Positions 15,058 through 33,470 of a stretch of DNA of 64,000 bases are shown one piece after another (positions within the stretch are counted from its first letter, which is position 1; each line of letters begins with the position of its first letter). Location of the stretch: the NCBI RefSeq assembly GCF_963853765.1, contig NC_088858.1, forward strand, positions 35,340,001 through 35,404,000, in the 5' to 3' direction. Source of the stretch: Magallana gigas. Lineage: Eukaryota. The translations under genes were made by a program, and so were the position numbers. The notes beneath the pieces are model-generated. The model worked only from the letters and a program-made list of their open reading frames with translations, searched no databases and was not told where the DNA came from.

Positions 15058-15075
15058 ACATCAGCTATTCTTGCA

Positions 15076-15197
15076 GACCCCTGATGAGGCTCATAACTGC
15101 CGAAACACTCTACAACTATTAGTACTTGCATATTTTAAATTGCAATTTGCTTTTTTGCAAAACATTACACTATCTTTGTGGTTTGGAGTGTCGGGTC
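15076..15197 (+). ncRNA. Type I hammerhead ribozyme with large stem III insertion
   Basis: Stem I GACCC (15076-80)/GGGTC (15193-97). Core CTGATGA (15081-87). Stem II GGC/GCC with 8-nt loop. GAAA (15102-05). Stem III ACACTC/GAGTGT. GUC cleavage triplet at 15190-92. Confidence 0.88.
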
Positions 15198-15495
15198 CTA
15201 ATAAATCCCTTACAAGTCTGGTTGATTGATGTCGCTAATTTTCACACTTTGACTAGGGACAATGTCCCACCGGCATCATCCCGTGCATCGCCCTCCCTTG
15301 GACAGCGATCGACTTGTGTGGTTTATTTGGTCTTCCAACATCTCCAACCACACCTGTTTCTATTGTCTTCTGAGACATTTTACTACCATCACTTCCTTTA
15401 CCAAATTAACTTGAATATGTAAAGGACTGGATTGCTACTTCAAAGTTGGTTTATTATACTTCTCTTATAAATCAAACACATTGGTTTATTCAAAT

Positions 15496-16263
15496 ATGCA
15501 CAACCCCAGCATCAGCCTTCATTCTGTTACTATGTACCAGCACTTTAACAAGCTCTCCCTCAAGAAATCCTCTACACAAATGTCAGAAGTTGACTACATG
15601 GACATCATGAAAGACCAAGTTCCTTCAAACCAAGAAGCAGCTATACAGGACTTGGACATGTCTATCAATCTACCAGATATTGATAGAGCATCGGCATTGA
15701 CAAAATCAAAAGTCTTGGAGTCTACTGAAGCCATTTTGTCTACCCGCCTACTTTACGCCAAACGTAAAGAGAGTATTTCTCATGGATTAAGGACGGGCCG
15801 CTTCCCATCGTGGTTCGGAAGCAAACTCCATTGTGAGTTAAACCTCCCTAGAGAGGATAACGACAACTTTGGCACTTTTCTCCTTGGATTACAAAAAGAA
15901 ACTACCTCGGCGTTCGGAAACTCTATCCTAAGCTACCTAGAGCGCTTGATCAGTGAAAAAGAAAGTGAAAGTAACAAATTAAGGGCAGAACATTTAAAAA
16001 GTCTGCAAGCTGAAACCGACGGCTATACCTTTGCCACTGAAAAAAGAAAGTTAGACGATGCCATCACAGCCATAACGGCCAAGCACACGACTGAACTACA
16101 AGAACATCGTCAAAAACTTCTCTCGTTATATAATCAACCGACAAGACCGGGCCACGCATCGTACACGTCCACAAACCACAAAAGCCATTCCAAACAACAA
16201 AGGAATGTGGGACATTACCGATACAGAGGACATAGCTATGTTCAGAGAAACAAACCATATTAA
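15496..16263 (+). CDS. PLE ORF1, ~255 aa, helical/coiled-coil with basic C-terminal tail (monomer 1)
   Basis: Open frame (ATG at 15496) repeated in every monomer. Charged helical central region and His/Arg-rich tail ending RNKPY. Function unknown. Confidence 0.7.
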   Translation: MHNPSISLHSVTMYQHFNKLSLKKSSTQMSEVDYMDIMKDQVPSNQEAAIQDLDMSINLPDIDRASALTKSKVLESTEAILSTRLLYAKRKESISHGLRTGRFPSWFGSKLHCELNLPREDNDNFGTFLLGLQKETTSAFGNSILSYLERLISEKESESNKLRAEHLKSLQAETDGYTFATEKRKLDDAITAITAKHTTELQEHRQKLLSLYNQPTRPGHASYTSTNHKSHSKQQRNVGHYRYRGHSYVQRNKPY

Positions 16264-16803
16264 CTTTCATATATTCTGTGCTATTTGTATAACGCCTGCT
16301 TGCACCATTAATAGTGCACCTATTGCTTTGGCACTAAGAGCCTAAGTATTAAACCATATCATTTGAGACCAAGTTTCTGTCTCATTGCTTCAATATAGTT
16401 CATGACTTTTGATTCACTTTTATGTTTTTGTTTTATCTTTTTCATCCACTTGCATTGTTAATCCACTCAGGATCAACAATTGAAACTAAGACGGGTTCTC
16501 ATTTTTACCTCTAATATTACGACATAGCGTATATTAGACGGTAGGTGCTTTATTAAGAACCAATTACTACAATTCATAACCCATTAAGCACACACTGGGT
16601 TTGACTAACGCGATCGCACACAGCAGCCTCCACGTGACCGCAATTAATCTATAAATTGGGCTATCAGTTCTCACTGCGTTACATTACCAGTATCCTCTAA
16701 TCTACCAACACACATTGGTAATTAGACGGATTCCTACCTAACCTACACAATAATTGTTGTTATTGTACACACGCAGCTCCTCTATTTAAATGGCTCGACG
16801 ACC

Positions 16804-18693
16804 GTGAAACGCACGTGTAATTATTTACGGGCTTATCAGGCTCACTGTAAAAAATCTACGGCCATAGGAGACAAGCTCGTGTTAAACCTATCACGACACA
16901 CGCTATCCAAAGACGAGCTCTGACTTCTGAGCAAAGGCTTAAAATTCATTCCTACGCCAAAAAATAACAACGCTAAGCGTTTACTTCTCAAAGACTTTGA
17001 CGAATTTGCAAGAAAACTCAGATGCAAATTCCACTTTGATACCGGGGACAACTCGCCGATTCACCCCTTTAAAACAAAGTCTGGGTTTATGCCGCCTTTG
17101 GCTTGCCGAGAACTCGAGGATTACATAGATAAAACAAAACTTGAACTTTCCTCAATGGAAATTGTAAACACGAGATCGAATATCTCTAAATCTGAGAGAG
17201 CGGCTATTTTATCGCTTAAAAATAACAACGACATCGTTATAAAAAAAGCAGATAAAAGTAATACCATTGTCATTATGAACAGAGATCAGTATGTCTCAGA
17301 AGCACATCGACAATTGTTATCCAAACACTATATGCAAGTACCTGAACCGAACATGCTCAAGCTGCATAATGATATTCAAAATATACTTTCGGAAATGCAT
17401 ATAAATGGGTCACTAGACAAAGAAACTTACAAGTTTCTGAATGACAATAAACCGTCATTAAAATGTGGTCATCTTTATCTTCTACCAAAAACCCACAAAA
17501 TTCCTGAACACATTTACAACGCTTTAATGAACGGTCATTGCAGCATCAGAAAATTACCACCTGGTAGACCAATTATCGCGCAATGCAACACGCCGACAAG
17601 GAAAATAGGACAGTACTGCGATCACTTTCTCGTCCTTATCGTACAAAAACAATCAACGTATATTAAAGATACTGCGGACTTTATCAACAAAATTGAAAGC
17701 CTCACGCCGCCACCTAACGCATTATTAATTACTTATGACGTGACAAGCATGTACACAAACATGGAATTCAATGAACTTCTTTCATCGGTGCACGAGGCTT
17801 ACACGCAGGCTAATAAAATTAAATCAGACATTCCTTATCCCACACCCAAGGAGCTAACGCTATTATTGAAATGCGTTTTAGAAAACAATTACTTTGAATT
17901 TGACGGAAAATTCTACAAGCAAATCATTGGAGCAAGCATGGGTGCAATTCCAAGTCCAGAAATTTGTGACATTCGAATGTATCAAATCACACAGCATATT
18001 GTTACACAATTTCGTCATGCAAACAAAATTTTGTTCCATGGAAGATATCGGGATGATGGCTTTATTATATTCAATGGCACCACAGAGGAAATAGAGGATT
18101 TTTTTCAAATTGGCAATCATTGTCACAAGCATCTTCAATTTACGTTTGAAGTCTCACCATCTTCTGTGAACTTTCTTGATACTACAGTTTACAAAGGCCC
18201 CAGATTTCAAACCTTTAACAAGCTTGACATCAAGTCATTTATCAAACCTACAAACAACTTTCAATATCTACACAGACAGAGCGCTCATAGCCCATCTGTG
18301 TTTAAAGGTTTCATTAAAGGAGAATGCATTAGACATGCACGAAATACTACCGACCCTACAATTTTGAATGCTACACTCAATGATTTTAAGGCGCATCTGT
18401 CAAAGCGGGGCTACTCTCCCCAAGAAATCGACCCAATTATCAAAGAAACAACAAACACAAATCGAACAAAACTCATCCTCAATAAGACTCCAAAGCAAGC
18501 ACTACGTAACCCTACGGTATTGGTTACTAAATTCAATCCTTGCCTTAAAGGACTCAAAAAGCGAATTTTAAAGTATTGGGATATTGTACTTAGGAATTCT
18601 GAATGCAAATCTTCTTTTGATGCTCGACCTATTATAGCTTTCAGCAAGCACAAAAACATTAGCGACGAGATAATCAGGTCTCACTTAAAATAA
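16804..18693 (+). pseudogene. PLE RT, monomer 1, with in-frame nonsense codon
   Basis: TGA at 16921-16923 where the other copies have TCA. Otherwise nearly identical to the intact copies. Confidence 0.88.
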
Positions 18694-18711
18694 ACATCAG
18701 CTATTCTTGCA

Positions 18712-18833
18712 GACCCCTGATGAGGCTCATAACTGCCGAAACACTCTACAACTATTAGTACTTGCATATTTTAAATTGCAATTTGCTTTTTTGCAAAACA
18801 TTACACTATCTTTGTGGTTTGGAGTGTCGGGTC
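18712..18833 (+). ncRNA. Type I hammerhead ribozyme
   Basis: Same motif as 15076-15197 (+3636). Confidence 0.88.
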
Positions 18834-19131
18834 CTAATAAATCCCTTACAAGTCTGGTTGATTGATGTCGCTAATTTTCACACTTTGACTAGGGACAATG
18901 TCCCACCGGCATCATCCCGTGCATCGCCCTCCCTTGGACAGCGATCGACTTGTGTGGTTTATTTGGTCTTCCAACATCTCCAACCACACCTGTTTCTATT
19001 GTCTTCTGAGACATTTTACTACCATCACTTCCTTTACCAAATTAACTTGAATATGTAAAGGACTGGATTGCTACTTCAAAGTTGGTTTATTATACTTCTC
19101 TTATAAATCAAACACATTGGTTTATTCAAAT

Positions 19132-19899
19132 ATGCACAACCCCAGCATCAGCCTTCATTCTGTTACTATGTACCAGCACTTTAACAAGCTCTCCCTCAAG
19201 AAATCCTCTACACAAAGGTCAGAAGTTGACTACATGGACATCATGAAAGACCAAGTTCCTTCAAACCAAGAAGCAGCTATACAGGACTTGGACATGTCTA
19301 TCAATCTACCAGATATTGATAGAGCATCGGCATTGACAAAATCAAAAGTCTTGGAGTCTACTGAAGCCATTTTGTCTACCCGCCTACTTTACGCCAAACG
19401 TAAAGAGAGTATTTCTCATGGATTAAGGACGGGCCGCTTCCCATCGTGGTTCGGAAGCAAACTCCATTGTGAGTTAAACCTCCCTAGAGAGGATAACGAC
19501 AACTTTGGCACTTTTCTCCTTGGATTACAAAAAGAAACTACCTCGGCGTTCGGAAACTCTATCCTAAGCTACCTAGAGCGCTTGATCAGTGAAAAAGAAA
19601 GTGAAAGTAACAAATTAAGGGCAGAACATTTAAAAAGTCTGCAAGCTGAAACCGACGGCTATACCTTTGCCACTGAAAAAAGAAAGTTAGACGATGCCAT
19701 CACAGCCATAACGGCCAAGCACACGACTGAACTACAAGAACATCGTCAAAAACTTCTCTCGTTATATAATCAACCGACAAGACCGGGCCACGCATCGTAC
19801 ACGTCCACAAACCACAAAAGCCATTCCAAACAACAAAGGAATGTGGGACATTACCGATACAGAGGACATAGCTATGTTCAGAGAAACAAACCATATTAA
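19132..19899 (+). CDS. PLE ORF1 (monomer 2)
   Basis: Copy of 15496-16263 with one M>R change (19217). Confidence 0.7.
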   Translation: MHNPSISLHSVTMYQHFNKLSLKKSSTQRSEVDYMDIMKDQVPSNQEAAIQDLDMSINLPDIDRASALTKSKVLESTEAILSTRLLYAKRKESISHGLRTGRFPSWFGSKLHCELNLPREDNDNFGTFLLGLQKETTSAFGNSILSYLERLISEKESESNKLRAEHLKSLQAETDGYTFATEKRKLDDAITAITAKHTTELQEHRQKLLSLYNQPTRPGHASYTSTNHKSHSKQQRNVGHYRYRGHSYVQRNKPY

Positions 19900-20439
19900 C
19901 TTTCATATATTCTGTGCTATTTGTATAACGCCTGCTTGCACCATTAATAGTGCACCTATTGCTTTGGCACTAAGAGCCTAAGTATTAAACCATATCATTT
20001 GAGACCAAGTTTCTGTCTCATTGCTTCAATATAGTTCATGACTTTTGATTCACTTTTATGTTTTTGTTTTATCTTTTTCATCCACTTGCATTGTTAATCC
20101 ACTCAGGATCAACAATTGAAACTAAGACGGGTTCTCATTTTTACCTCTAATATTACGACATAGCGTATATTAGACGGTAGGTGCTTTATTAAGAACCAAT
20201 TACTACAATTCATAACCCATTAAGCACACACTGGGTTTGACTAACGCGATCGCACACAGCAGCCTCCACGTGACCGCAATTAATCTATAAATTGGGCTAT
20301 CAGTTCTCACTGCGTTACATTACCAGTATCCTCTAATCTACCAACACACATTGGTAATTAGACGGATTCCTACCTAACCTACACAATAATTGTTGTTATT
20401 GTACACACGCAGCTCCTCTATTTAAATGGCTCGACGACC

Positions 20440-22329
20440 GTGAAACGCACGTGTAATTATTTACGGGCTTATCAGGCTCACTGTAAAAAATCTACGGCCA
20501 TAGGAGACAAGCTCGTGTTAAACCTATCACGACACACGCTATCCAAAGACGAGCTCTCACTTTTGAGCAAAGGCTTAAAATTCATTCCTACGCCAAAAAA
20601 TAACAACGCTAAGCGTTTACTTCTCAAAGACTTTGACGAATTTGCAAGAAAACTCAGATGCAAATTCCACTTTGATACCGGGGACAACTCGCCGATTCAC
20701 CCCTTTAAAACAAAGTCTGGGTTTATGCCGCCTTTGGCTTGCCGAGAACTCGAGGATTACATAGATAAAACAAAACTTGAACTTTCCTCAATGGAAATTG
20801 TAAACACGAGATCGAATATCTCTAAATCTGAGAGAGCGGCTATTTTATCGCTTAAAAATAACAACGACATCGTTATAAAAAAAGCAGATAAAAGTAATAC
20901 CATTGTCATTATGAACAGAGATCAGTATGTCTCAGAAGCACATCGACAATTGTTATCCAAACACTATATGCAAGTACCTGAACCGAACATGCTCAAGCTG
21001 CATAATGATATTCAAAATATACTTTCGGAAATGCATATAAATGGGTCACTAGACAAAGAAACTTACAAGTTTCTGAATGACAATAAACCGTCATTAAAAT
21101 GTGGTCATCTTTATCTTCTACCAAAAACCCACAAAATTCCTGAACACATTTACAACGCTTTAATGAACGGTCATTGCAGCATCAGAAAATTACCACCTGG
21201 TAGACCAATTATCGCGCAATGCAACACGCCGACAAGGAAAATAGGACAGTACTGCGATCACTTTCTCGTCCCTATCGTACAAAAACAATCAACGTATATT
21301 AAAGATACTGCGGACTTTATCAACAAAATTGAAAGCCTCACGCCGCCACCTAACGCATTATTAATTACTTATGACGTGACAAGCATGTACACAAACATGG
21401 AATTCAATGAACTTCTTTCATCGGTGCACGAGGCTTACACGCAGGCTAATAAAATTAAATCAGACATTCCTTATCCCACACCCAAGGAGCTAACGCTATT
21501 ATTGAAATGCGTTTTAGAAAACAATTACTTTGAATTTGACGGAAAATTCTACAAGCAAATCATTGGAGCAAGCATGGGTGCAATTCCAAGTCCAGAAATT
21601 TGTGACATTCGAATGTATCAAATCACACAGCATATTGTTACACAATTTCGTCATGCAAACAAAATTTTGTTCCATGGAAGATATCGGGATGATGGCTTTA
21701 TTATATTCAATGGCACCACAGAGGAAATAGAGGATTTTTTTCAAATTGGCAATCATTGTCACAAGCATCTTCAATTTACGTTTGAAGTCTCACCATCTTC
21801 TGTGAACTTTCTTGATACTACAGTTTACAAAGGCCCCAGATTTCAAACCTTTAACAAGCTTGACATCAAGTCATTTATCAAACCTACAAACAACTTTCAA
21901 TATCTACACAGACAGAGCGCTCATAGCCCATCTGTGTTTAAAGGTTTCATTAAAGGAGAATGCATTAGACATGCACGAAATACTACCGACCCTACAATTT
22001 TGAATGCTACACTCAATGATTTTAAGGCGCATCTGTCAAAGCGGGGCTACTCTCCCCAAGAAATCGACCCAATTATCAAAGAAACAACAAACACAAATCG
22101 AACAAAACTCATCCTCAATAAGACTCCAAAGCAAGCACTACGTAACCCTACGGTATTGGTTACTAAATTCAATCCTTGCCTTAAAGGACTCAAAAAGCGA
22201 ATTTTAAAGTATTGGGATATTGTACTTAGGAATTCTGAATGCAAATCTTCTTTTGATGCTCGACCTATTATAGCTTTCAGCAAGCACAAAAACATTAGCG
22301 ACGAGATAATCAGGTCTCACTTAAAATAA
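20440..22329 (+). CDS. PLE reverse transcriptase without GIY-YIG endonuclease (monomer 2, intact; true start uncertain)
   Basis: VLNLS..LS..E..LLSKGLKFIPTP, HLYLLPKTHK, PGRPII, YIKDT.DFI, TYDVTSMYTN, NYFEFDGKFYKQ..G.SMG, GRYRDDGF, VNFLD, KPTN..QYLH..S.H, KGE.IR. Ends PIIAFSKHKNISDEIIRSHLK*. Confidence 0.93.
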   Translation: MKRTCNYLRAYQAHCKKSTAIGDKLVLNLSRHTLSKDELSLLSKGLKFIPTPKNNNAKRLLLKDFDEFARKLRCKFHFDTGDNSPIHPFKTKSGFMPPLACRELEDYIDKTKLELSSMEIVNTRSNISKSERAAILSLKNNNDIVIKKADKSNTIVIMNRDQYVSEAHRQLLSKHYMQVPEPNMLKLHNDIQNILSEMHINGSLDKETYKFLNDNKPSLKCGHLYLLPKTHKIPEHIYNALMNGHCSIRKLPPGRPIIAQCNTPTRKIGQYCDHFLVPIVQKQSTYIKDTADFINKIESLTPPPNALLITYDVTSMYTNMEFNELLSSVHEAYTQANKIKSDIPYPTPKELTLLLKCVLENNYFEFDGKFYKQIIGASMGAIPSPEICDIRMYQITQHIVTQFRHANKILFHGRYRDDGFIIFNGTTEEIEDFFQIGNHCHKHLQFTFEVSPSSVNFLDTTVYKGPRFQTFNKLDIKSFIKPTNNFQYLHRQSAHSPSVFKGFIKGECIRHARNTTDPTILNATLNDFKAHLSKRGYSPQEIDPIIKETTNTNRTKLILNKTPKQALRNPTVLVTKFNPCLKGLKKRILKYWDIVLRNSECKSSFDARPIIAFSKHKNISDEIIRSHLK

Positions 22330-22347
22330 ACATCAGCTATTCTTGCA

Positions 22348-22469
22348 GACCCCTGATGAGGCTCATAACTGCCGAAACACTCTACAACTATTAGTACTTG
22401 CATATTTTAAATTGCAATTTGCTTTTTTGCAAAACATTACACTATCTTTGTGGTTTGGAGTGTCGGGTC
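22348..22469 (+). ncRNA. Type I hammerhead ribozyme
   Basis: Same motif as 15076-15197. Confidence 0.88.
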
Positions 22470-22767
22470 CTAATAAATCCCTTACAAGTCTGGTTGATTG
22501 ATGTCGCTAATTTTCACACTTTGACTAGGGACAATGTCCCACCGGCATCATCCCGTGCATCGCCCTCCCTTGGACAGCGATCGACTTGTGTGGTTTATTT
22601 GGTCTTCCAACATCTCCAACCACACCTGTTTCTATTGTCTTCTGAGACATTTTACTACCATCACTTCCTTTACCAAATTAACTTGAATATGTAAAGGACT
22701 GGATTGCTACTTCAAAGTTGGTTTATTATACTTCTCTTATAAATCAAACACATTGGTTTATTCAAAT

Positions 22768-23535
22768 ATGCACAACCCCAGCATCAGCCTTCATTCTGTT
22801 ACTATGTACCAGCACTTTAACAAGCTCTCCCTCAAGAAATCCTCTACACAAATGTCAGAAGTTGACTACATGGACATCATGAAAGACCAAGTTCCTTCAA
22901 ACCAAGAAGCAGCTATACAGGACTTGGACATGTCTATCAATCTACCAGATATTGATAGAGCATCGGCATTGACAAAATCAAAAGTCTTGGAGTCTACTGA
23001 AGCCATTTTGTCTACCCGCCTACTTTACGCCAAACGTAAAGAGAGTATTTCTCATGGATTAAGGACGGGCCGCTTCCCATCGTGGTTCGGAAGCAAACTC
23101 CATTGTGAGTTAAACCTCCCTAGAGAGGATAACGACAACTTTGGCACTTTTCTCCTTGGATTACAAAAAGAAACTACCTCGGCGTTCGGAAACTCTATCC
23201 TAAGCTACCTAGAGCGCTTGATCAGTGAAAAAGAAAGTGAAAGTAACAAATTAAGGGCAGAACATTTAAAAAGTCTGCAAGCTGAAACCGACGGCTATAC
23301 CTTTGCCACTGAAAAAAGAAAGTTAGACGATGCCATCACAGCCATAACGGCCAAGCACACGACTGAACTACAAGAACATCGTCAAAAACTTCTCTCGTTA
23401 TATAATCAACCGACAAGACCGGGCCACGCATCGTACACGTCCACAAACCACAAAAGCCATTCCAAACAACAAAGGAATGTGGGACATTACCGATACAGAG
23501 GACATAGCTATGTTCAGAGAAACAAACCATATTAA
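22768..23535 (+). CDS. PLE ORF1 (monomer 3)
   Basis: Same protein as monomer 1 ORF1. Confidence 0.7.
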   Translation: MHNPSISLHSVTMYQHFNKLSLKKSSTQMSEVDYMDIMKDQVPSNQEAAIQDLDMSINLPDIDRASALTKSKVLESTEAILSTRLLYAKRKESISHGLRTGRFPSWFGSKLHCELNLPREDNDNFGTFLLGLQKETTSAFGNSILSYLERLISEKESESNKLRAEHLKSLQAETDGYTFATEKRKLDDAITAITAKHTTELQEHRQKLLSLYNQPTRPGHASYTSTNHKSHSKQQRNVGHYRYRGHSYVQRNKPY

Positions 23536-24075: not shown

Positions 24076-25920
24076 GTGAAACGCACGTGTAATTATTTAC
24101 GGGCTTATCAGGCTCACTGTAAAAAATCTACGGCCATAGGAGACAAGCTCGTGTTAAACCTATCACGACACACGCTATCCAAAGACGAGCTCTCACTTTT
24201 GAGCAAAGGCTTAAAATTCATTCCTACGCCAAAAAATAACAACGCTAAGCGTTTACTTCTCAAAGACTTTGACGAATTTGCAAGAAAACTCAGATGCAAA
24301 TTCCACTTTGATACCGGGGACAACTCGCCGATTCACCCCTTTAAAACAAAGTCTGGGTTTATGCCGCCTTTGGCTTGCCGAGAACTCGAGGATTACATAG
24401 ATAAAACAAAACTTGAACTTTCCTCAATGGAAATTGTAAACACGAGATCGAATATCTCTAAATCTGAGAGAGCGGCTATTTTATCGCTTAAAAATAACAA
24501 CGACATCGTTATAAAAAAAGCAGATAAAAGTAATACCATTGTCATTATGAACAGAGATCAGTATGTCTCAGAAGCACATCGACAATTGTTATCCAAACAC
24601 TATATGCAAGTACCTGAACCGAACATGCTCAAGCTGCATAATGATATTCAAAATATACTTTCGGAAATGCATATAAATGGGTCACTAGACAAAGAAACTT
24701 ACAAGTTTCTGAATGACAATAAACCGTCATTAAAATGTGGTCATCTTTATCTTCTACCAAAAACCCACAAAATTCCTGAACACATTTACAACGCTTTAAT
24801 GAACGGTCATTGCAGCATCAGAAAATTACCACCTGGTAGACCAATTATCGCGCAATGCAACACGCCGACAAGGAAAATAGGACAGTACTGCGATCACTTT
24901 CTCGTCCCTATCGTACAAAAACAATCAACGTATATTAAAGATACTGCGGACTTTATCAACAAAATTGAAAGCCTCACGCCGCCACCTAACGCATTATTAA
25001 TTACTTATGACGTGACAAGCATGTACACAAACATGGAATTCAATGAACTTCTTTCATCGGTGCACGAGGCTTACACGCAGGCTAATAAAATTAAATCAGA
25101 CATTCCTTATCCCACACCCAAGGAGCTAACGCTATTATTGAAATGCGTTTTAGAAAACAATTACTTTGAATTTGACGGAAAATTCTACAAGCAAATCATT
25201 GGAGCAAGCATGGGTGCAATTCCAAGTCCAGAAATTTGTGACATTCGAATGTATCAAATCACACAGCATATTGTTACACAATTTCGTCATGCAAACAAAA
25301 TTTTGTTCCATGGAAGATATCGGGATGATGGCTTTATTATATTCAATGGCACCACAGAGGAAATAGAGGATTTTTTTCAAATTGGCAATCATTGTCACAA
25401 GCATCTTCAATTTACGTTTGAAGTCTCACCATCTTCTGTGAACTTTCTTGATACTACAGTTTACAAAGGCCCCAGATTTCAAACCTTTAACAAGCTTGAC
25501 ATCAAGTCATTTATCAAACCTACAAACAACTTTCAATATCTACACAGACAGAGCGCTCATAGCCCATCTGTGTTTAAAGGTTTCATTAAAGGAGAATGCA
25601 TTAGACATGCACGAAATACTACCGACCCTACAATTTTGAATGCTACACTCAATGATTTTAAGGCGCATCTGTCAAAGCGGGGCTACTCTCCCCAAGAAAT
25701 CGACCCAATTATCAAAGAAACAACAAACACAAATCGAACAAAACTCATCCTCAATAAGACTCCAAAGCAAGCACTACGTAACCCTACGGTATTGGTTACT
25801 AAATTCAATCCTTGCCTTAAAGGACTCAAAAAGCGAATTTTAAAGTATTGGGATATTGTACTTAGGAATTCTGAATGCAAATCTTCTTTTGATGCTCGAC
25901 CTATTATAGCTTTCAGCTAA
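24076..25920 (+). CDS. PLE RT (monomer 3), last 15 aa lost by deletion
   Basis: Ends PIIAFS* at a junction that deletes ~364 bp, including the hammerhead, with filler TAACATTT (25918-25925). Confidence 0.88.
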   Translation: MKRTCNYLRAYQAHCKKSTAIGDKLVLNLSRHTLSKDELSLLSKGLKFIPTPKNNNAKRLLLKDFDEFARKLRCKFHFDTGDNSPIHPFKTKSGFMPPLACRELEDYIDKTKLELSSMEIVNTRSNISKSERAAILSLKNNNDIVIKKADKSNTIVIMNRDQYVSEAHRQLLSKHYMQVPEPNMLKLHNDIQNILSEMHINGSLDKETYKFLNDNKPSLKCGHLYLLPKTHKIPEHIYNALMNGHCSIRKLPPGRPIIAQCNTPTRKIGQYCDHFLVPIVQKQSTYIKDTADFINKIESLTPPPNALLITYDVTSMYTNMEFNELLSSVHEAYTQANKIKSDIPYPTPKELTLLLKCVLENNYFEFDGKFYKQIIGASMGAIPSPEICDIRMYQITQHIVTQFRHANKILFHGRYRDDGFIIFNGTTEEIEDFFQIGNHCHKHLQFTFEVSPSSVNFLDTTVYKGPRFQTFNKLDIKSFIKPTNNFQYLHRQSAHSPSVFKGFIKGECIRHARNTTDPTILNATLNDFKAHLSKRGYSPQEIDPIIKETTNTNRTKLILNKTPKQALRNPTVLVTKFNPCLKGLKKRILKYWDIVLRNSECKSSFDARPIIAFS

Positions 25921-26047
25921 CATTTGACATTTTACTACCATCACTTCCTTTACCAAATTAACTTGAATATGTAAAGGACTGGATTGCTACTTCAAAGTTG
26001 GTTTATTATACTTCTCTTATAAATCAAACACATTGGTTTATTCAAAT

Positions 26048-26731
26048 ATGCACAACCCCAGCATCAGCCTTCATTCTGTTACTATGTACCAGCACTTTAA
26101 CAAGCTCTCCCTCAAGAAATCCTCTACACAAATGTCAGAAGTTGACTACATGGACATCATGAAAGACCAAGTTCCTTCAAACCAAGAAGCAGCTATACAG
26201 GACTTGGACATGTCTATCAATCTACCAGATATTGATAGAGCATCGGCATTGACAAAATCAAAAGTCTTGGAGTCTACTGAAGCCATTTTGTCTACCCGCC
26301 TACTTTACGCCAAACGTGGAGAGGATAACGACAACTTTGGCACTTTTCTCCTTGGATTACAAAAAGAAACTACCTCGGCGTTCGGAAACTCTATCCTAAG
26401 CTACCTAGAGCGCTTGATCAGTGAAAAAGAAAGTGAAAGTAACAAATTAAGGGCAGAACATTTAAAAAGTCTGCAAGCTGAAACCGACGGCTATACCTTT
26501 GCCACTGAAAAAAGAAAGTTAGACGATGCCATCACAGCCATAACGGCCAAGCACACGACTGAACTACAAGAACATCGTCAAAAACTTCTCTCGTTATATA
26601 ATCAACCGACAAGACCGGGCCACGCATCGTACACGTCCACAAACCACAAAAGCCATTCCAAACAACAAAGGAATGTGGGACATTACCGATACAGAGGACA
26701 TAGCTATGTTCAGAGAAACAAACCATATTAA
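26048..26731 (+). CDS. PLE ORF1 (monomer 4) with net 84-bp in-frame deletion
   Basis: YAKR-G-EDND junction at ~26317; 28 aa shorter than the other copies. Confidence 0.65.
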   Translation: MHNPSISLHSVTMYQHFNKLSLKKSSTQMSEVDYMDIMKDQVPSNQEAAIQDLDMSINLPDIDRASALTKSKVLESTEAILSTRLLYAKRGEDNDNFGTFLLGLQKETTSAFGNSILSYLERLISEKESESNKLRAEHLKSLQAETDGYTFATEKRKLDDAITAITAKHTTELQEHRQKLLSLYNQPTRPGHASYTSTNHKSHSKQQRNVGHYRYRGHSYVQRNKPY

Positions 26732-27271
26732 CTTTCATATATTCTGTGCTATTTGTATAACGCCTGCTTGCACCATTAATAGTGCACCTATTGCTTTGGC
26801 ACTAAGAGCCTAAGTATTAAACCATATCATTTGAGACCAAGTTTCTGTCTCATTGCTTCAATATAGTTCATGACTTTTGATTCACTTTTATGTTTTTGTT
26901 TTATCTTTTTCATCCACTTGCATTGTTAATCCACTCAGGATCAACAATTGAAACTAAGACGGGTTCTCATTTTTACCTCTAATATTACGACATAGCGTAT
27001 ATTAGACGGTAGGTGCTTTATTAAGAACCAATTACTACAATTCATAACCCATTAAGCACACACTGGGTTTGACTAACGCGATCGCACACAGCAGCCTCCA
27101 CGTGACCGCAATTAATCTATAAATTGGGCTATCAGTTCTCACTGCGTTACATTACCAGTATCCTCTAATCTACCAACACACATTGGTAATTAGACGGATT
27201 CCTACCTAACCTACACAATAATTGTTGTTATTGTACACACGCAGCTCCTCTATTTAAATGGCTCGACGACC

Positions 27272-29161
27272 GTGAAACGCACGTGTAATTATTTACGGGC
27301 TTATCAGGCTCACTGTAAAAAATCTACGGCCATAGGAGACAAGCTCGTGTTAAACCTATCACGACACACGCTATCCAAAGACGAGCTCTCACTTTTGAGC
27401 AAAGGCTTAAAATTCATTCCTACGCCAAAAAATAACAACGCTAAGCGTTTACTTCTCAAAGACTTTGACGAATTTGCAAGAAAACTCAGATGCAAATTCC
27501 ACTTTGATACCGGGGACAACTCGCCGATTCACCCCTTTAAAACAAAGTCTGGGTTTATGCCGCCTTTGGCTTGCCGAGAACTCGAGGATTACATAGATAA
27601 AACAAAACTTGAACTTTCCTCAATGGAAATTGTAAACACGAGATCGAATATCTCTAAATCTGAGAGAGCGGCTATTTTATCGCTTAAAAATAACAACGAC
27701 ATCGTTATAAAAAAAGCAGATAAAAGTAATACCATTGTCATTATGAACAGAGATCAGTATGTCTCAGAAGCACATCGACAATTGTTATCCAAACACTATA
27801 TGCAAGTACCTGAACCGAACATGCTCAAGCTGCATAATGATATTCAAAATATACTTTCGGAAATGCATATAAATGGGTCACTAGACAAAGAAACTTACAA
27901 GTTTCTGAATGACAATAAACCGTCATTAAAATGTGGTCATCTTTATCTTCTACCAAAAACCCACAAAATTCCTGAACACATTTACAACGCTTTAATGAAC
28001 GGTCATTGCAGCATCAGAAAATTACCACCTGGTAGACCAATTATCGCGCAATGCAACACGCCGACAAGGAAAATAGGACAGTACTGCGATCACTTTCTCG
28101 TCCCTATCGTACAAAAACAATCAACGTATATTAAAGATACTGCGGACTTTATCAACAAAATTGAAAGCCTCACGCCGCCACCTAACGCATTATTAATTAC
28201 TTATGACGTGACAAGCATGTACACAAACATGGAATTCAATGAACTTCTTTCATCGGTGCACGAGGCTTACACGCAGGCTAATAAAATTAAATCAGACATT
28301 CCTTATCCCACACCCAAGGAGCTAACGCTATTATTGAAATGCGTTTTAGAAAACAATTACTTTGAATTTGACGGAAAATTCTACAAGCAAATCATTGGAG
28401 CAAGCATGGGTGCAATTCCAAGTCCAGAAATTTGTGACATTCGAATGTATCAAATCACACAGCATATTGTTACACAATTTCGTCATGCAAACAAAATTTT
28501 GTTCCATGGAAGATATCGGGATGATGGCTTTATTATATTCAATGGCACCACAGAGGAAATAGAGGATTTTTTTCAAATTGGCAATCATTGTCACAAGCAT
28601 CTTCAATTTACGTTTGAAGTCTCACCATCTTCTGTGAACTTTCTTGATACTACAGTTTACAAAGGCCCCAGATTTCAAACCTTTAACAAGCTTGACATCA
28701 AGTCATTTATCAAACCTACAAACAACTTTCAATATCTACACAGACAGAGCGCTCATAGCCCATCTGTGTTTAAAGGTTTCATTAAAGGAGAATGCATTAG
28801 ACATGCACGAAATACTACCGACCCTACAATTTTGAATGCTACACTCAATGATTTTAAGGCGCATCTGTCAAAGCGGGGCTACTCTCCCCAAGAAATCGAC
28901 CCAATTATCAAAGAAACAACAAACACAAATCGAACAAAACTCATCCTCAATAAGACTCCAAAGCAAGCACTACGTAACCCTACGGTATTGGTTACTAAAT
29001 TCAATCCTTGCCTTAAAGGACTCAAAAAGCGAATTTTAAAGTATTGGGATATTGTACTTAGGAATTCTGAATGCAAATCTTCTTTTGATGCTCGACCTAT
29101 TATAGCTTTCAGCAAGCACAAAAACATTAGCGACGAGATAATCAGGTCTCACTTAAAATAA
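27272..29161 (+). CDS. PLE RT without endonuclease (monomer 4, intact)
   Basis: Same protein as 20440-22329. Confidence 0.93.
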   Translation: MKRTCNYLRAYQAHCKKSTAIGDKLVLNLSRHTLSKDELSLLSKGLKFIPTPKNNNAKRLLLKDFDEFARKLRCKFHFDTGDNSPIHPFKTKSGFMPPLACRELEDYIDKTKLELSSMEIVNTRSNISKSERAAILSLKNNNDIVIKKADKSNTIVIMNRDQYVSEAHRQLLSKHYMQVPEPNMLKLHNDIQNILSEMHINGSLDKETYKFLNDNKPSLKCGHLYLLPKTHKIPEHIYNALMNGHCSIRKLPPGRPIIAQCNTPTRKIGQYCDHFLVPIVQKQSTYIKDTADFINKIESLTPPPNALLITYDVTSMYTNMEFNELLSSVHEAYTQANKIKSDIPYPTPKELTLLLKCVLENNYFEFDGKFYKQIIGASMGAIPSPEICDIRMYQITQHIVTQFRHANKILFHGRYRDDGFIIFNGTTEEIEDFFQIGNHCHKHLQFTFEVSPSSVNFLDTTVYKGPRFQTFNKLDIKSFIKPTNNFQYLHRQSAHSPSVFKGFIKGECIRHARNTTDPTILNATLNDFKAHLSKRGYSPQEIDPIIKETTNTNRTKLILNKTPKQALRNPTVLVTKFNPCLKGLKKRILKYWDIVLRNSECKSSFDARPIIAFSKHKNISDEIIRSHLK

Positions 29162-29179
29162 ACATCAGCTATTCTTGCA

Positions 29180-29301
29180 GACCCCTGATGAGGCTCATAA
29201 CTGCCGAAACACTCTACAACTATTAGTACTTGCATATTTTAAATTGCAATTTGCTTTTTTGCAAAACATTACACTATCTTTGTGGTTTGGAGTGTCGGGT
29301 C
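29180..29301 (+). ncRNA. Type I hammerhead ribozyme
   Basis: Same motif as 15076-15197. Confidence 0.88.
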
Positions 29302-29599
29302 CTAATAAATCCCTTACAAGTCTGGTTGATTGATGTCGCTAATTTTCACACTTTGACTAGGGACAATGTCCCACCGGCATCATCCCGTGCATCGCCCTCC
29401 CTTGGACAGCGATCGACTTGTGTGGTTTATTTGGTCTTCCAACATCTCCAACCACACCTGTTTCTATTGTCTTCTGAGACATTTTACTACCATCATTTCC
29501 TTTACCAAATTAACTTGAATATGTAAAGGACTGGATTGCTACTTCAAAGTTGGTTTATTATACTTCTCTTATAAATCAAACACATTGGTTTATTCAAAT

Positions 29600-30367
29600 A
29601 TGCACAACCCCAGCATCAGCCTTCATTCTGTTACTATGTACCAGCACTTTAACAAGCTCTCCCTCAAGAAATCCTCTACACAAATGTCAGAAGTTGACTA
29701 CATGGACATCATGAAAGACCAAGTTCCTTCAAACCAAGAAGCAGCTATACAGGACTTGGACATGTCTATCAATCTACCAGATATTGATAGAGCATCGGCA
29801 TTGACAAAATCAAAAGTCTTGGAGTCTACTGAAGCCATTTTGTCTACCCGCCTACTTTACGCCAAACGTAAAGAGAGTATTTCTCATGGATTAAGGACGG
29901 GCCGCTTCCCATCGTGGTTCGGAAGCAAACTCCATTGTGAGTTAAACCTCCCTAGAGAGGATAACGACAACTTTGGCACTTTTCTCCTTGGATTACAAAA
30001 AGAAACTACCTCGGCGTTCGGAAACTCTATCCTAAGCTACCTAGAGCGCTTGATCAGTGAAAAAGAAAGTGAAAGTAACAAATTAAGGGCAGAACATTTA
30101 AAAAGTCTGCAAGCTGAAACCGACGGCTATACCTTTGCCACTGAAAAAAGAAAGTTAGACGATGCCATCACAGCCATAACGGCCAAGCACACGACTGAAC
30201 TACAAGAACATCGTCAAAAACTTCTCTCGTTATATAATCAACCGACAAGACCGGGCCACGCATCGTACACGTCCACAAACCACAAAAGCCATTCCAAACA
30301 ACAAAGGAATGTGGGACATTACCGATACAGAGGACATAGCTATGTTCAGAGAAACAAACCATATTAA
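29600..30367 (+). CDS. PLE ORF1 (monomer 5)
   Basis: Same protein as monomer 1 ORF1. Confidence 0.7.
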   Translation: MHNPSISLHSVTMYQHFNKLSLKKSSTQMSEVDYMDIMKDQVPSNQEAAIQDLDMSINLPDIDRASALTKSKVLESTEAILSTRLLYAKRKESISHGLRTGRFPSWFGSKLHCELNLPREDNDNFGTFLLGLQKETTSAFGNSILSYLERLISEKESESNKLRAEHLKSLQAETDGYTFATEKRKLDDAITAITAKHTTELQEHRQKLLSLYNQPTRPGHASYTSTNHKSHSKQQRNVGHYRYRGHSYVQRNKPY

Positions 30368-30907
30368 CTTTCATATATTCTGTGCTATTTGTATAACGCC
30401 TGCTTGCACCATTAATAGTGCACCTATTGCTTTGGCACTAAGAGCCTAAGTATTAAACCATATCATTTGAGACCAAGTTTCTGTCTCATTGCTTCAATAT
30501 AGTTCATGACTTTTGATTCACTTTTATGTTTTTGTTTTATCTTTTTCATCCACTTGCATTGTTAATCCACTCAGGATCAACAATTGAAACTAAGACGGGT
30601 TCTCATTTTTACCTCTAATATTACGACATAGCGTATATTAGACGGTAGGTGCTTTATTAAGAACCAATTACTACAATTCATAACCCATTAAGCACACACT
30701 GGGTTTGACTAACGCGATCGCACACAGCAGCCTCCACGTGACCGCAATTAATCTATAAATTGGGCTATCAGTTCTCACTGCGTTACATTACCAGTATCCT
30801 CTAATCTACCAACACACATTGGTAATTAGACGGATTCCTACCTAACCTACACAATAATTGTTGTTATTGTACACACGCAGCTCCTCTATTTAAATGGCTC
30901 GACGACC

Positions 30908-32797
30908 GTGAAACGCACGTGTAATTATTTACGGGCTTATCAGGCTCACTGTAAAAAATCTACGGCCATAGGAGACAAGCTCGTGTTAAACCTATCACGA
31001 CACACGCTATCCAAAGACGAGCTCTCACTTTTGAGCAAAGGCTTAAAATTCATTCCTACGCCAAAAAATAACAACGCTAAGCGTTTACTTCTCAAAGACT
31101 TTGACGAATTTGCAAGAAAACTCAGATGCAAATTCCACTTTGATACCGGGGACAACTCGCCGATTCACCCCTTTAAAACAAAGTCTGGGTTTATGCCGCC
31201 TTTGGCTTGCCGAGAACTCGAGGATTACATAGATAAAACAAAACTTGAACTTTCCTCAATGGAAATTGTAAACACGAGATCGAATATCTCTAAATCTGAG
31301 AGAGCGGCTATTTTATCGCTTAAAAATAACAACGACATCGTTATAAAAAAAGCAGATAAAAGTAATACCATTGTCATTATGAACAGAGATCAGTATGTCT
31401 CAGAAGCACATCGACAATTGTTATCCAAACACTATATGCAAGTACCTGAACCGAACATGCTCAAGCTGCATAATGATATTCAAAATATACTTTCGGAAAT
31501 GCATATAAATGGGTCACTAGACAAAGAAACTTACAAGTTTCTGAATGACAATAAACCGTCATTAAAATGTGGTCATCTTTATCTTCTACCAAAAACCCAC
31601 AAAATTCCTGAACACATTTACAACGCTTTAATGAACGGTCATTGCAGCATCAGAAAATTACCACCTGGTAGACCAATTATCGCGCAATGCAACACGCCGA
31701 CAAGGAAAATAGGACAGTACTGCGATCACTTTCTCGTCCCTATCGTACAAAAACAATCAACGTATATTAAAGATACTGCGGACTTTATCAACAAAATTGA
31801 AAGCCTCACGCCGCCACCTAACGCATTATTAATTACTTATGACGTGACAAGCATGTACACAAACATGGAATTCAATGAACTTCTTTCATCGGTGCACGAG
31901 GCTTACACGCAGGCTAATAAAATTAAATCAGACATTCCTTATCCCACACCCAAGGAGCTAACGCTATTATTGAAATGCGTTTTAGAAAACAATTACTTTG
32001 AATTTGACGGAAAATTCTACAAGCAAATCATTGGAGCAAGCATGGGTGCAATTCCAAGTCCAGAAATTTGTGACATTCGAATGTATCAAATCACACAGCA
32101 TATTGTTACACAATTTCGTCATGCAAACAAAATTTTGTTCCATGGAAGATATCGGGATGATGGCTTTATTATATTCAATGGCACCACAGAGGAAATAGAG
32201 GATTTTTTTCAAATTGGCAATCATTGTCACAAGCATCTTCAATTTACGTTTGAAGTCTCACCATCTTCTGTGAACTTTCTTGATACTACAGTTTACAAAG
32301 GCCCCAGATTTCAAACCTTTAACAAGCTTGACATCAAGTCATTTATCAAACCTACAAACAACTTTCAATATCTACACAGACAGAGCGCTCATAGCCCATC
32401 TGTGTTTAAAGGTTTCATTAAAGGAGAATGCATTAGACATGCACGAAATACTACCGACCCTACAATTTTGAATGCTACACTCAATGATTTTAAGGCGCAT
32501 CTGTCAAAGCGGGGCTACTCTCCCCAAGAAATCGACCCAATTATCAAAGAAACAACAAACACAAATCGAACAAAACTCATCCTCAATAAGACTCCAAAGC
32601 AAGCACTACGTAACCCTACGGTATTGGTTACTAAATTCAATCCTTGCCTTAAAGGACTCAAAAAGCGAATTTTAAAGTATTGGGATATTGTACTTAGGAA
32701 TTCTGAATGCAAATCTTCTTTTGATGCTCGACCTATTATAGCTTTCAGCAAGCACAAAAACATTAGCGACGAGATAATCAGGTCTCACTTAAAATAA
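30908..32797 (+). CDS. PLE RT without endonuclease (monomer 5, intact)
   Basis: Same protein as 20440-22329. Only 190 nt separate its stop from the end of the insertion. Confidence 0.93.
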   Translation: MKRTCNYLRAYQAHCKKSTAIGDKLVLNLSRHTLSKDELSLLSKGLKFIPTPKNNNAKRLLLKDFDEFARKLRCKFHFDTGDNSPIHPFKTKSGFMPPLACRELEDYIDKTKLELSSMEIVNTRSNISKSERAAILSLKNNNDIVIKKADKSNTIVIMNRDQYVSEAHRQLLSKHYMQVPEPNMLKLHNDIQNILSEMHINGSLDKETYKFLNDNKPSLKCGHLYLLPKTHKIPEHIYNALMNGHCSIRKLPPGRPIIAQCNTPTRKIGQYCDHFLVPIVQKQSTYIKDTADFINKIESLTPPPNALLITYDVTSMYTNMEFNELLSSVHEAYTQANKIKSDIPYPTPKELTLLLKCVLENNYFEFDGKFYKQIIGASMGAIPSPEICDIRMYQITQHIVTQFRHANKILFHGRYRDDGFIIFNGTTEEIEDFFQIGNHCHKHLQFTFEVSPSSVNFLDTTVYKGPRFQTFNKLDIKSFIKPTNNFQYLHRQSAHSPSVFKGFIKGECIRHARNTTDPTILNATLNDFKAHLSKRGYSPQEIDPIIKETTNTNRTKLILNKTPKQALRNPTVLVTKFNPCLKGLKKRILKYWDIVLRNSECKSSFDARPIIAFSKHKNISDEIIRSHLK

Positions 32798-32815
32798 ACA
32801 TCAGCTATTCTTGCA

Positions 32816-32937
32816 GACCCCTGATGAGGCTCATAACTGCCGAAACACTCTACAACTATTAGTACTTGCATATTTTAAATTGCAATTTGCTTTTTTGCAA
32901 AACATTACACTATCTTTGTGGTTTGGAGTGTCGGGTC
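32816..32937 (+). ncRNA. Type I hammerhead ribozyme (terminal copy)
   Basis: Same motif as 15076-15197; predicted cleavage after 32932. Confidence 0.88.
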
Positions 32938-33470
32938 CTAATAAATCCCTTACAAGTCTGGTTGATTGATGTCGCTAATTTTCACACTTCAACGTTGAAT
33001 CAACGTTGAATAATGGTTGAACAACGTTGTAACTTGATTTCAACCTTTCCTCAACGTTGAAACAACGTTGCGTGCCCACTGGGTTATAGGTCCCCATCTT
33101 TATATCCAAGTGATTTTCGGATGAATGACATTACTATTACTGTGGTTTCATTAATATTCAAGGGTATCAATTTTCGTGGATATAGGGAAAATCATAGTTT
33201 CGAGGATACGAAAATTCGTGGCCAGTGACCCTATCAATACAAAATGTTAATAGAAATTGCACTTTAATGAACATTTAATTTCGTTGATCAACTTAACAAC
33301 GAAATCCACGAAAATTAGTATTCAATGAATATTGATGAAACCACAGTATTTAAGGTGCCTACCTCCTTGAACTAGATGGTATCACGCTGCGTGGAAATTA
33401 ACACTTTCAACATTACTATGATTTATACAACGCTCAATATGATGGACACTATTTTTTGTTCACTTTTAGT

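What the first reader, a model, noticed from the sequence alone, without database searches (positions are those of the whole stretch)
15248..32987. Endonuclease-less, two-ORF Penelope-like element amplified at a non-telomeric site
Seen: three intact, identical RT ORFs stop right after PIIAFSKHKNISDEIIRSHLK, the motif that precedes the Cys linker and GIY-YIG nuclease in EN+ PLEs. Only 190 nt remain to the element end, and no GIY-YIG/CCHH-like ORF occurs anywhere in the monomer, including upstream of RT. A separate ORF1 precedes RT. No TTAGGG arrays flank or interrupt the insertion. Known: EN- PLEs (Athena, Coprina, Terminons) are mostly terminal and prime on telomere ends; interstitial clades (Penelope/Poseidon, Neptune, Nematis, Hydra, Naiad/Chlamys) carry a GIY-YIG domain. 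Inference: this could be a recently active EN- lineage that integrates internally by another route. I cannot confirm that it is undescribed.
Basis: partly seen in the sequence, partly recalled or inferred. Interest (0 to 1): 0.92.

Follow-up and report, generated by a model that had tools for sequence, protein, structure and literature searches.

The report
Nuclease-less Penelope-like retroelement array in oyster
This oyster chromosome carries a 20-kb tandem and inverted cluster of a Penelope-like retrotransposon from a large, old bivalve lineage that has no DNA-cutting enzyme yet inserts in chromosome interiors, so how it integrates is an open and testable question.

Summary
Window 12518-32986 is one composite insertion of a 3636-nt Penelope-like element (PLE): two inverted tail fragments, one 5'-truncated direct copy and five direct units, 99.9-100% identical. 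Each unit has a helical ORF1, a reverse transcriptase (RT) ORF and a 189-nt tail with a hammerhead ribozyme.

The RT ends exactly where related PLEs in this genome begin their zinc-finger linker and GIY-YIG endonuclease (EN). A six-frame profile search finds no linker or EN in the array; the positive control scored E=7.6e-104.

This is not a recent deletion derivative. Families at 67% and 49% RT identity in this genome, and about 645-aa relatives in Saccostrea, Pinctada, Mytilus and Argopecten, stop at the same residue. They form one EN-less clade next to EN+ clades.

Copies are dispersed in chromosome interiors, without telomeric repeats and without the (TA)n tracts that flank the resident EN+ PLEs.

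Two corrections apply. The insertion starts at 12518, not 15248. All five units carry a 28-nt deletion that puts the native ATG out of frame with the RT.

EN loss inside EN+ PLE clades is already reported as occasional (Craig et al. 2021). I therefore rate this a new variant of a known kind. The integration route is inferred, not shown. The scan held no followed-up report of this lineage.

The parts
12518..12913 (-). Outermost left piece: inverted tail fragment (unit positions 3241-3636). It ends outward in ...TTTTCACA.
12913..14353 (-). Inverted 5'-truncated copy (unit positions 2196-3636) with a 466-aa partial RT frame at 13102-14502.
14351..15246 (+). 5'-truncated direct copy (unit positions 2741-3636). 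It acts as the upstream pseudo-LTR.
15247..18882 (+). Unit 1, full length. ORF1 is at 15481-16263. The RT frame is interrupted by one TGA.
18883..22518 (+). Unit 2, full length. ORF1 is at 19117-19899 and the RT frame at 20440-22329.
22519..25917 (+). Unit 3, cut at unit position 3399. The RT frame at 24076-25920 lacks its last residues.
25926..29350 (+). Unit 4 with internal losses (unit positions 128-519, then 605-3636). ORF1 is shortened (26033-26731). The RT frame is at 27272-29161.
29351..32986 (+). Unit 5, full length. This is the reference unit for this report.
29636..30367 (+). ORF1, 243 aa counted from the conserved Met (MYQHFNKLSLKK...). It is all-helical with a disordered basic tail ending in RNKPY.
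30894..30911 (+). Remnant of the native RT start: ATG GCT CGA CGA CCG TGA (MARRP-stop). A 28-nt deletion relative to the copies on C9 and C10 puts this ATG out of frame with the RT.
30908..32797 (+). RT frame (629 codons as listed, 655 open). It has the GLKF and DKS N-terminal motifs, the RT core and RYRDDG. It ends at ...IIRSHLK, where EN+ relatives begin their linker.
32816..32938 (+). Type I hammerhead ribozyme motif: GACCC, CUGAUGAG, a GGC/GCC helix II, CGAAAC, and a long helix III insert. The predicted cut is after GUC at 32932.
32933..32986 (+). 3'-terminal 54 nt, ending in the precise terminus ...GCTAATTTTCACA that all copies share.

Best explanation
SHOWN. Window 12518-32986 is one composite insertion of a Penelope-like retroelement with a 3636-nt unit: ORF1, RT, and a tail carrying a hammerhead ribozyme. 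The pieces point tail-outward, inverted on the left and in tandem on the right. The element belongs to a large, deeply diverged clade that encodes no endonuclease at all. Every named relative comes from a bivalve. The RT stops at the residue where the nearest EN+ relatives continue into a CX4CxxC linker and a CCHH-type GIY-YIG domain. ORF1 is a helical protein with a basic tail, not a nuclease. Copies lie in chromosome interiors, at unrelated target sequences, with a precise 3' end.

INFERRED (about 45% for this step). The RT starts cDNA synthesis on DNA 3'-OH ends that it does not make itself, such as nicks, breaks or replication intermediates. The template is a multimeric or circularised ribozyme-processed RNA, because several 3' junctions run on into the first bases of the next unit. 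Continued copying round or along that template, plus template switching, yields identical tandem units and inverted truncated copies in a single event.

INFERRED (more likely than not). The clade arose by a single loss of linker plus EN from a C-terminal EN+ ancestor of the Neptune/Nematis type.

The units of this particular array have lost the in-frame start codon of the RT. They probably depend on RT made by sister copies.
For: Anatomy and identity of the pieces.

Absence of EN: with a positive control at E=7.6e-104.

Boundary with EN: the own-genome EN+ ORF in L043 reads ...AAFKRPRNLKDMVVRTKLK and then NPLPNGGFRTCSDTRCLLC... into GIY-YIG. Our RT ends at the aligned ...RSHLK.

EN-lessness is clade-wide:
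- In this genome, families at 66-68% and 48-50% identity end at query residues 626-629, with open frames of 630-680 aa, in tandem spacings of 3.4-3.6 kb.
- Homologues of about 645 aa occur in Saccostrea, Pinctada, Mytilus and Argopecten.
- Among 137 near-full-length relatives the C-terminal extension is bimodal: about 0 aa, or 134-186 aa.
- In the quick tree the query sits in a clade of 66 rows, 65 of them EN- (SH-aLRT 98).
- In the careful tree EN- and EN+ rows separate with one change (UFBoot 85, and 88% of bootstrap trees).
- The EN+ neighbours carry a CX4CxxC linker.

ORF1: conserved, all-helical in the model and without a fold match.

Interstitial location: the window lies at C6:35.34 Mb and C6 reaches at least 55.7 Mb. 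Copies are spread over all ten large contigs. There are no telomeric repeats. The Mytilus array lies at 63.8 Mb of a 90.6-Mb record.

The 3' end is precise and 13 host junctions are unrelated in sequence.

Evidence for a multimeric or circular template:
- 9 of 13 host junctions start with C (binomial p=1.3e-4).
- 3 start with CTT, matching the unit's first bases CTTTG.

Not the resident EN: 11 of 12 EN+ PLE loci carry (TA)n tracts, against 1 of 60 EN- loci.

Weak or absent target-site duplications: only 2-3 of 12 insertions exceed the mismatched-flank control.

The hammerhead is conserved, with compensatory changes in helices II and III across families and in Mytilus.

The start-codon lesion.
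Against: - No empty sites were recovered, so target-site duplications, deletions and microhomology at the 5' junctions are not established.
- One insertion has a 15/16 direct repeat, and the window insertion has an 8/8 repeat. Either could mark staggered nicks made by some nuclease.
- The tree is unrooted, so loss cannot be told from gain.
- Eight EN- rows that sat inside EN+ clades were left out of the careful tree.
- No named reference PLEs (Athena, Coprina, Neptune, Nematis, Penelope) could be included.
- RNA reads are sparse, lie on both strands, and show no back-joint from unit end to unit start. They give no direct evidence for a circular or multimeric RNA.
- The identical units could also have arisen by DNA-level unequal exchange.
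Confidence: 0.6

Rival explanations
1. The lineage borrows an endonuclease in trans. The donor would be a co-resident EN+ PLE, a LINE, or a host nuclease recruited by the RT or ORF1. Insertion is then ordinary target-primed reverse transcription at an enzymatic nick.
For: - The genome holds at least 150 GIY-YIG matches over the Pfam cut-off, many in open frames of 700-1000 aa.
- Flank repeats of 15/16 nt (C1:63.0 Mb) and 8/8 nt (this window) could be target-site duplications.
- The 3' ends are precise, as in target-primed reverse transcription.
Against: - The EN+ PLEs sampled here sit next to (TA)n in 11 of 12 loci, against 1 of 60 EN- loci.
- 9-10 of 12 insertions show no flank repeat above the control.
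- In PLEs the EN is fused to its own RT. No trans use is documented in the papers read (PMC8557442).
Confidence: 0.2
2. This array is a dead end that grew at the DNA level. A single defective insertion, with the RT start out of frame, was multiplied by unequal crossing-over or replication slippage. The five units would then say nothing about retrotransposition.
For: - All five units share the 28-nt deletion and are 99.9-100% identical.
- Units 3 and 4 carry rearrangements.
- RNA contigs from another sample carry the undeleted form at this site.
Against: - Tandem plus inverted 5'-truncated arrangements are the standard product of PLE insertion (PMC8557442).
- They recur at independent loci of this family (C4:54.18 Mb, C9:9.28 Mb, C1:27.2 Mb), in other families and in Mytilus.
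- The outward-facing tails at both ends are hard to obtain by unequal exchange alone.
Confidence: 0.15
3. ORF1 supplies the missing nuclease or integrase function.
For: ORF1 is conserved across diverged oyster families. 46 columns are invariant among 7 sequences at about 38% identity.
Against: - The model is all-helical, with no strands.
- There is no PDB fold match at E<=0.001 and no Pfam match.
- There are no Cys/His clusters or acidic catalytic motifs.
- The Mytilus relative has no ORF1 at all, yet forms the same arrays.
Confidence: 0.03

Closest known systems
C-terminal EN+ PLEs with a CX2-5CxxC linker (Neptune/Nematis type), as present in this same genome
   Same: - The RT is homologous over about 600 aa (37% identity to the ORF at C4:41.59 Mb).
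- The N-terminal GxKF motif and the thumb are shared, as is the ...NL.D.LVRA.L motif that closes the RT.
- Both form tandem and inverted arrays.
   Different: - There is no linker and no GIY-YIG.
- There is no (TA)n targeting.
- The motif is DKS instead of DKG.
- A separate ORF1 is present.
- Membership of a named clade could not be tested, because no reference sequences were available.
Neptune-like EN- element MjPLE01 of the kuruma shrimp, and Chlamys PLE-X (EN- families inside EN+ clades; Craig et al. 2021, PMC8557442)
   Same: EN is lost within an otherwise EN+ part of the PLE tree. The authors likewise infer some alternative way of using accessible 3'-OH ends.
   Different: - Those are reported as occasional single families.
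- Here the EN- state defines a clade with dozens of 50%-identity clusters, several co-resident families per genome, at least four bivalve genera and near-identical dispersed copies.
- The sequence relationship to MjPLE01 was not tested.
Athena and Coprina (EN- PLEs) and Terminons
   Same: There is no endonuclease, a hammerhead sits near the 3' end, and an upstream ORF1 with long helices is optional.
   Different: - Those elements sit at or near telomeres and end in short reverse-complement telomeric repeats.
- This element has neither and is dispersed in chromosome interiors.
- Its nearest relatives found here are EN+ elements.
Animal non-LTR retrozymes (Cervera and de la Pena 2020, PMC7229834; Li et al. 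2026 preprint, 10.64898/2026.07.22.740005)
   Same: Both are tandem units carrying a type I hammerhead. A circular or multimeric RNA has been proposed as the template that gives tandem cDNA.
   Different: Retrozymes are 170-400 nt and non-coding. This unit is 3.6 kb and encodes its own RT.

Membership tests
Penelope-like elements (order) | RT of the PLE type, with the N-terminal GxKF/Y and DKG-type motifs, RT core and thumb | tested here: met
   RVT_1 match at 26 bits, which is below the Pfam cut-off of 29.6. 37% identity over residues 26-629 to an own-genome ORF that carries a PLE-type linker and a CCHH GIY-YIG. GLKF is present. DKS stands in place of DKG.
Penelope-like elements (order) | Pseudo-LTR organisation: tandem and/or inverted 5'-truncated copies | tested here: met
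   The same arrangement occurs at other loci and in Mytilus.
Penelope-like elements (order) | Hammerhead ribozyme motif near the 3' end | tested here: met
   The CUGAUGAG and CGAAAC boxes are conserved. Helix II varies as GGC/GCC versus GGCGG/CCGCC. Helix III changes on both sides in Mytilus. The Rfam HH9 match is only 19.4 bits against a gathering score of 52. Cleavage was not assayed.
EN+ PLE clades (Penelope/Poseidon, Neptune, Nematis, Hydra) | C-terminal GIY-YIG endonuclease, with or without a Zn-finger linker | tested here: not met
   The six-frame profile and tblastn searches of 12400-33100 find only the RT end. The positive control scored E=7.6e-104.
Neptune/Nematis type | Insertion into (TA)n associated with the linker domain | tested here: not met
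   1 of 60 EN- loci has (TA)n of 6 or more repeats, against 11 of 12 EN+ loci.
Neptune/Nematis type | RT groups with named reference members | not testable with these tools
   No reference sequences were obtainable, and the supplement of PMC8557442 is not held. The only indirect evidence is that the nearest EN+ rows carry CX4CxxC.
Naiad/Chlamys | N-terminal GIY-YIG joined to the RT by a CxC motif; canonical hammerhead absent in Naiads | tested here: not met
   There is no EN in any frame. The RT frame opens only 26 codons above the listed start. A hammerhead is present.
Hydra | DKT in place of DKG, no GxKF/Y, an RWK motif, and a CxCX5C linker | tested here: not met
   GLKF is present, the motif is DKS, and there is no linker. 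RWK was not looked for.
Athena/Coprina (telomeric EN- PLEs) | Terminal or subtelomeric location, with reverse-complement telomeric repeats at the 3' end | tested here: not met
   Searches find no telomeric repeats. Copies are dispersed. The 3' end is ...TTTTCACA.
Athena/Coprina (telomeric EN- PLEs) | RT groups with Athena or Coprina references | not testable with these tools
   No reference sequences were available.

The most novel reading that the evidence does not exclude
This is a superfamily-level PLE clade, so far unnamed, that is interstitial and has no endonuclease. It has thrived for a long time in bivalves, and perhaps beyond, by priming on DNA ends it does not cut. It copies a ribozyme-processed circular or multimeric RNA, so that a single event lays down a whole tandem array. 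If so, endonuclease-independent retrotransposition is a normal lifestyle here rather than a telomere-bound exception.
Probability: 0.3. Interest if true: 0.8.

Novelty: new variant of a known kind. Interest (0 to 1): 0.6.

Why it matters
The accepted view is that a PLE without its GIY-YIG nuclease is confined to chromosome ends. EN loss inside EN+ clades has been noted only as an occasional event.

Here the EN-less state is shared by a whole diversified clade. That clade has several young families in one oyster genome and relatives in at least four bivalve genera, and it is dispersed in chromosome interiors. It avoids the (TA)n sites used by the nuclease-bearing PLEs living in the same genome.

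This gives a natural system, with internal EN+ controls, for asking how a reverse transcriptase finds a primer in the middle of a chromosome. It also lets one test whether tandem PLE and retrozyme arrays arise by copying circular or multimeric RNA.

There is a practical side. These RTs are currently annotated only as DUF8422/HTH_animal 'uncharacterized proteins'. Repeat libraries for bivalves would benefit from recognising them.

Tried and rejected
- **Rfam at gathering threshold over 11000-34500:** nothing. Only a sub-threshold hammerhead match appeared at the permissive threshold.
- **PDB sequence search with the RT:** nothing meaningful.
- **ORF1:** no Pfam family, only 8 word-based homologues, and no fold match in the PDB. 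The idea that ORF1 is a nuclease was dropped.
- **A stand-alone EN ORF next to a deep clade member** (L075, ORFs of 590 and 195 aa): no GIY-YIG and no other informative family.
- **An intron joining ORF1 to the RT:** no joints in the RNA reads, but depth was too low to exclude one.
- **Reference PLE sequences for a named-clade phylogeny:** the supplement of PMC8557442 is not held, and Gladyshev and Arkhipova 2007 is not held.
Contig lengths are therefore lower bounds taken from hit coordinates.
- **Pfam PF28514 in the local library:** absent.
- **Scan notes by words:** no hits.
Full report
**What is in the window**

Comparing the window with the unit 29351-32986 (3636 nt) shows one composite insertion from 12518 to 32986. 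Its pieces, from left to right, are:
- an inverted tail fragment at 12518-12913 (unit positions 3241-3636);
- an inverted 5'-truncated copy at 12913-14353 (unit 2196-3636);
- a direct 5'-truncated copy at 14351-15246 (unit 2741-3636);
- five direct units.

Three of the units are full length. One is cut at unit position 3399. One lacks unit positions 1-127 and 520-604. Identity is 99.7-100% throughout.

Both outer ends are element 3' ends (...GCTAATTTTCACA), so the tails point outward. Tandem plus inverted 5'-truncated copies are the organisation described for Penelope-like elements (PLEs) (PMC8557442).

**The unit**

Each unit holds three parts.
- ORF1 is 243 aa counted from the conserved Met (29636-30367 in unit 5).
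- The RT frame has 655 open codons and is listed as 30908-32797.
- The tail is 189 nt long.

The RT has a weak RVT_1 match. It is 37% identical over about 600 residues to an 828-aa ORF elsewhere in this genome (C4:41.59 Mb). That ORF continues into a CX4CxxC linker and a GIY-YIG domain with the PLE-specific Cys and His residues, and it is embedded in (TA)n.

The tail carries a type I hammerhead: GACCC, CUGAUGAG, helix II GGC/GCC, CGAAAC, and a long helix III insert, with GUC at 32930-32932. Rfam scores it below threshold. The boxes are nevertheless conserved in diverged families and in Mytilus, with changes on both sides of helices II and III.

**Is the endonuclease really absent?**

Yes. I built a profile from the linker and EN parts of six EN+ PLE ORFs of this same genome. 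Run without filters on all six frames of 12400-33100, it aligned only its first 25 positions, which are the end of the RT. The same profile scored E=7.6e-104 on a control locus.

The RT stops at ...IIRSHLK. This aligns with ...VVRTKLK of the EN+ relative, immediately before its linker.

Pfam's GIY-YIG model finds at least 150 matches over its cut-off elsewhere in the genome, so such domains are detectable in this genome when present.

**Deletion derivative or lineage trait?**

It is a lineage trait.
- In this genome, families at 66-68% and 48-50% RT identity all end at query residues 626-629. Their open frames are 630-680 aa, and they lie in tandem spacings of 3.4-3.6 kb.
- Public proteins of about 645 aa from Saccostrea, Pinctada, Mytilus and Argopecten end at the same place.
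- Among 137 near-full-length relatives the C-terminal extension is bimodal: about 0 aa, or 134-186 aa.
- In a 108-row tree of the RT region alone, the query lies in a clade of 66 rows, 65 EN- and one unclear (SH-aLRT 98). The EN+ rows form clades outside it.
- In a careful 59-row tree, EN- and EN+ rows fall on either side of one branch (UFBoot 85, SH-aLRT 55; 88% of bootstrap trees need one change).

For the careful tree I left out eight EN- rows that sat inside EN+ clades (P0166, P0213, P0187, P0183, P0161, P0206, P0179, P0207). They may be truncated gene models or secondary losses. I also thinned other rows.

The EN+ neighbours carry the CX4CxxC linker. The trees are unrooted. A single loss from a linker-type C-terminal EN+ ancestor is the simpler reading, but it is not shown.

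**ORF1**

ORF1 is conserved at 36-42% identity between oyster families whose RTs are 66-68% identical. 46 columns are invariant among seven sequences.

The AlphaFold model (mean pLDDT 63) has four long helices, no strands, and disordered ends that include an Arg-rich tail ending in PY. Foldseek finds nothing in the PDB at E<=0.001, and Pfam finds nothing.

ORF1 is not universal in the clade. A Mytilus edulis relative (46% RT identity) has a 2566-nt unit with the RT only, in a 100% identical tandem array beside inverted truncated copies. Other relatives carry a roughly 250-aa N-terminal extension fused to the RT.

ORF1 is therefore an accessory protein, probably RNA-binding, and not the missing nuclease.

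**Where the copies are**

The window is at C6:35.34 Mb, and hits on C6 reach 55.7 Mb. Copies of the family and its relatives are spread over all ten large contigs. The Mytilus array lies at 63.8 Mb of a 90.6-Mb record. No telomeric repeats occur in the window or in 288 kb of fetched loci.

**Activity**

The family has about a dozen loci at 93-100% identity. They include simple 5'-truncated solo copies of 89, 143, 340 and 779 nt. All end at the same nucleotide, next to 13 unrelated host sequences.

Runs from 13 studies hold the unit, six of them RNA libraries. In raw poly(A) RNA reads the depth is low and lies on both strands. A contig in one RNA library shows a different 3' flank, which indicates an insertion site not present in this assembly.

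Relatives start with MARR(F/L)NRR.... Copies of this same family on C9 (9.28 Mb) and C10 (8.07 Mb) do too, giving a frame of 643 codons from the ATG on C9.

All five units in the window have a 28-nt deletion directly after ATG GCT CGA CGA. The ATG now opens a five-codon mini-ORF, and the RT frame has no AUG for about 120 codons. Contigs from an RNA library continue with the undeleted sequence at this point (loose ends at 30905).

The array is thus built from a variant that probably cannot make RT efficiently by itself.

**How it may integrate**

Three observations bear on this.

1. The resident EN+ PLEs are flanked by (TA)n in 11 of 12 loci, as expected for linker-bearing ENs (PMC8557442). The same holds for only 1 of 60 EN- loci. 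Borrowing that EN is therefore unlikely.
2. Flank repeats that could be target-site duplications exceed a mismatched-flank control in only 2-3 of 12 insertions: 15/16 nt at C1:63.0 Mb, 8/8 nt at this window in a repeat-rich target, and 6/6 nt with slack.
3. The base after ...CACA is C in 9 of 13 host junctions (p=1.3e-4). Three junctions read CTT, matching the unit's first bases CTTTG. The template seems to continue from unit end into unit start, as in a multimeric or circular RNA, and priming seems to start at slightly variable positions.

The hammerhead cut lies 54 nt upstream of the DNA 3' end, so a ribozyme-processed unit RNA would be a circular permutation of the DNA unit.

I therefore favour priming on pre-existing DNA 3' ends from such an RNA. 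Continued copying and template switching would then give identical tandem units and inverted truncated copies. None of this is demonstrated. Empty sites and RNA-form data are needed.

**Comparison with what is known**

Craig et al. [quoted passage not shown] Searches of the held literature found no description of a diversified interstitial EN- clade in bivalves. Repbase and subscription journals could not be checked. Precomputed Pfam annotations label these RTs only as DUF8422 plus HTH_animal.

**Verdict**

The finding is a new variant of a known kind: EN loss as the stable state of a large, currently active, interstitial PLE clade. Its integration mechanism remains open.

Noticed in passing
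window 16790, 20426, 24062, 27258, 30894 (ATG of each unit): All five units share a 28-nt deletion just after the native RT start codon. It leaves a five-codon mini-ORF (MARRP-stop) whose TGA overlaps a GTG in the RT frame. Copies on C9 and C10, and contigs from an RNA library, have the undeleted form.
   Followed up: yes
window 11441-11502, 12440-12517 and 32987-33070: The insertion sits in a host repeat full of the palindromic motif CAACGTTGA. An 8-nt TTCAACGT occurs on both sides of the insertion, but the repeats make a target-site duplication ambiguous.
   Followed up: partly
window 33047-33178: RNA depth jumps here: 18-34 in raw reads against 0-6 over the element, and 8319 summed word depth in contigs. 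Many reads break at 33138 and 33170. This looks like a short, very abundant repeat or small RNA just right of the insertion.
   Followed up: no
L043 (G000:C4:41590000-41599000) and L032-L042: EN+ PLEs of this genome have a CX4CxxC linker and a CCHH GIY-YIG. 11 of 12 sampled loci carry long (TA)n tracts. The L043 ORF even starts inside (TA)n, which translates as a run of YI repeats.
   Followed up: partly
L074 (Mytilus edulis record OY782963.1, 63.78 Mb): A 2566-nt RT-only relative forms a 100% identical tandem array with inverted truncated copies and a hammerhead. There is no ORF1 and no EN.
   Followed up: partly
L075/L076 (ENA contig ctg4356, 27.9 kb): A deep EN- clade member recurs at a spacing of about 10.5 kb. 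Each copy has an upstream 590-aa ORF and a downstream 195-aa Arg-rich ORF, both without informative Pfam matches. This may be a larger element.
   Followed up: partly
window 32987 (RNA-library contig of run X15): One contig continues past the element's 3' end into sequence unlike this window's flank. The same family has an insertion at another site in another oyster sample.
   Followed up: no
P0189 (EukProt, Lapot gusevi transcriptome): A long-branch EN- relative is recorded from a protist transcriptome. This could be contamination from prey, or a genuinely wider host range.
   Followed up: no
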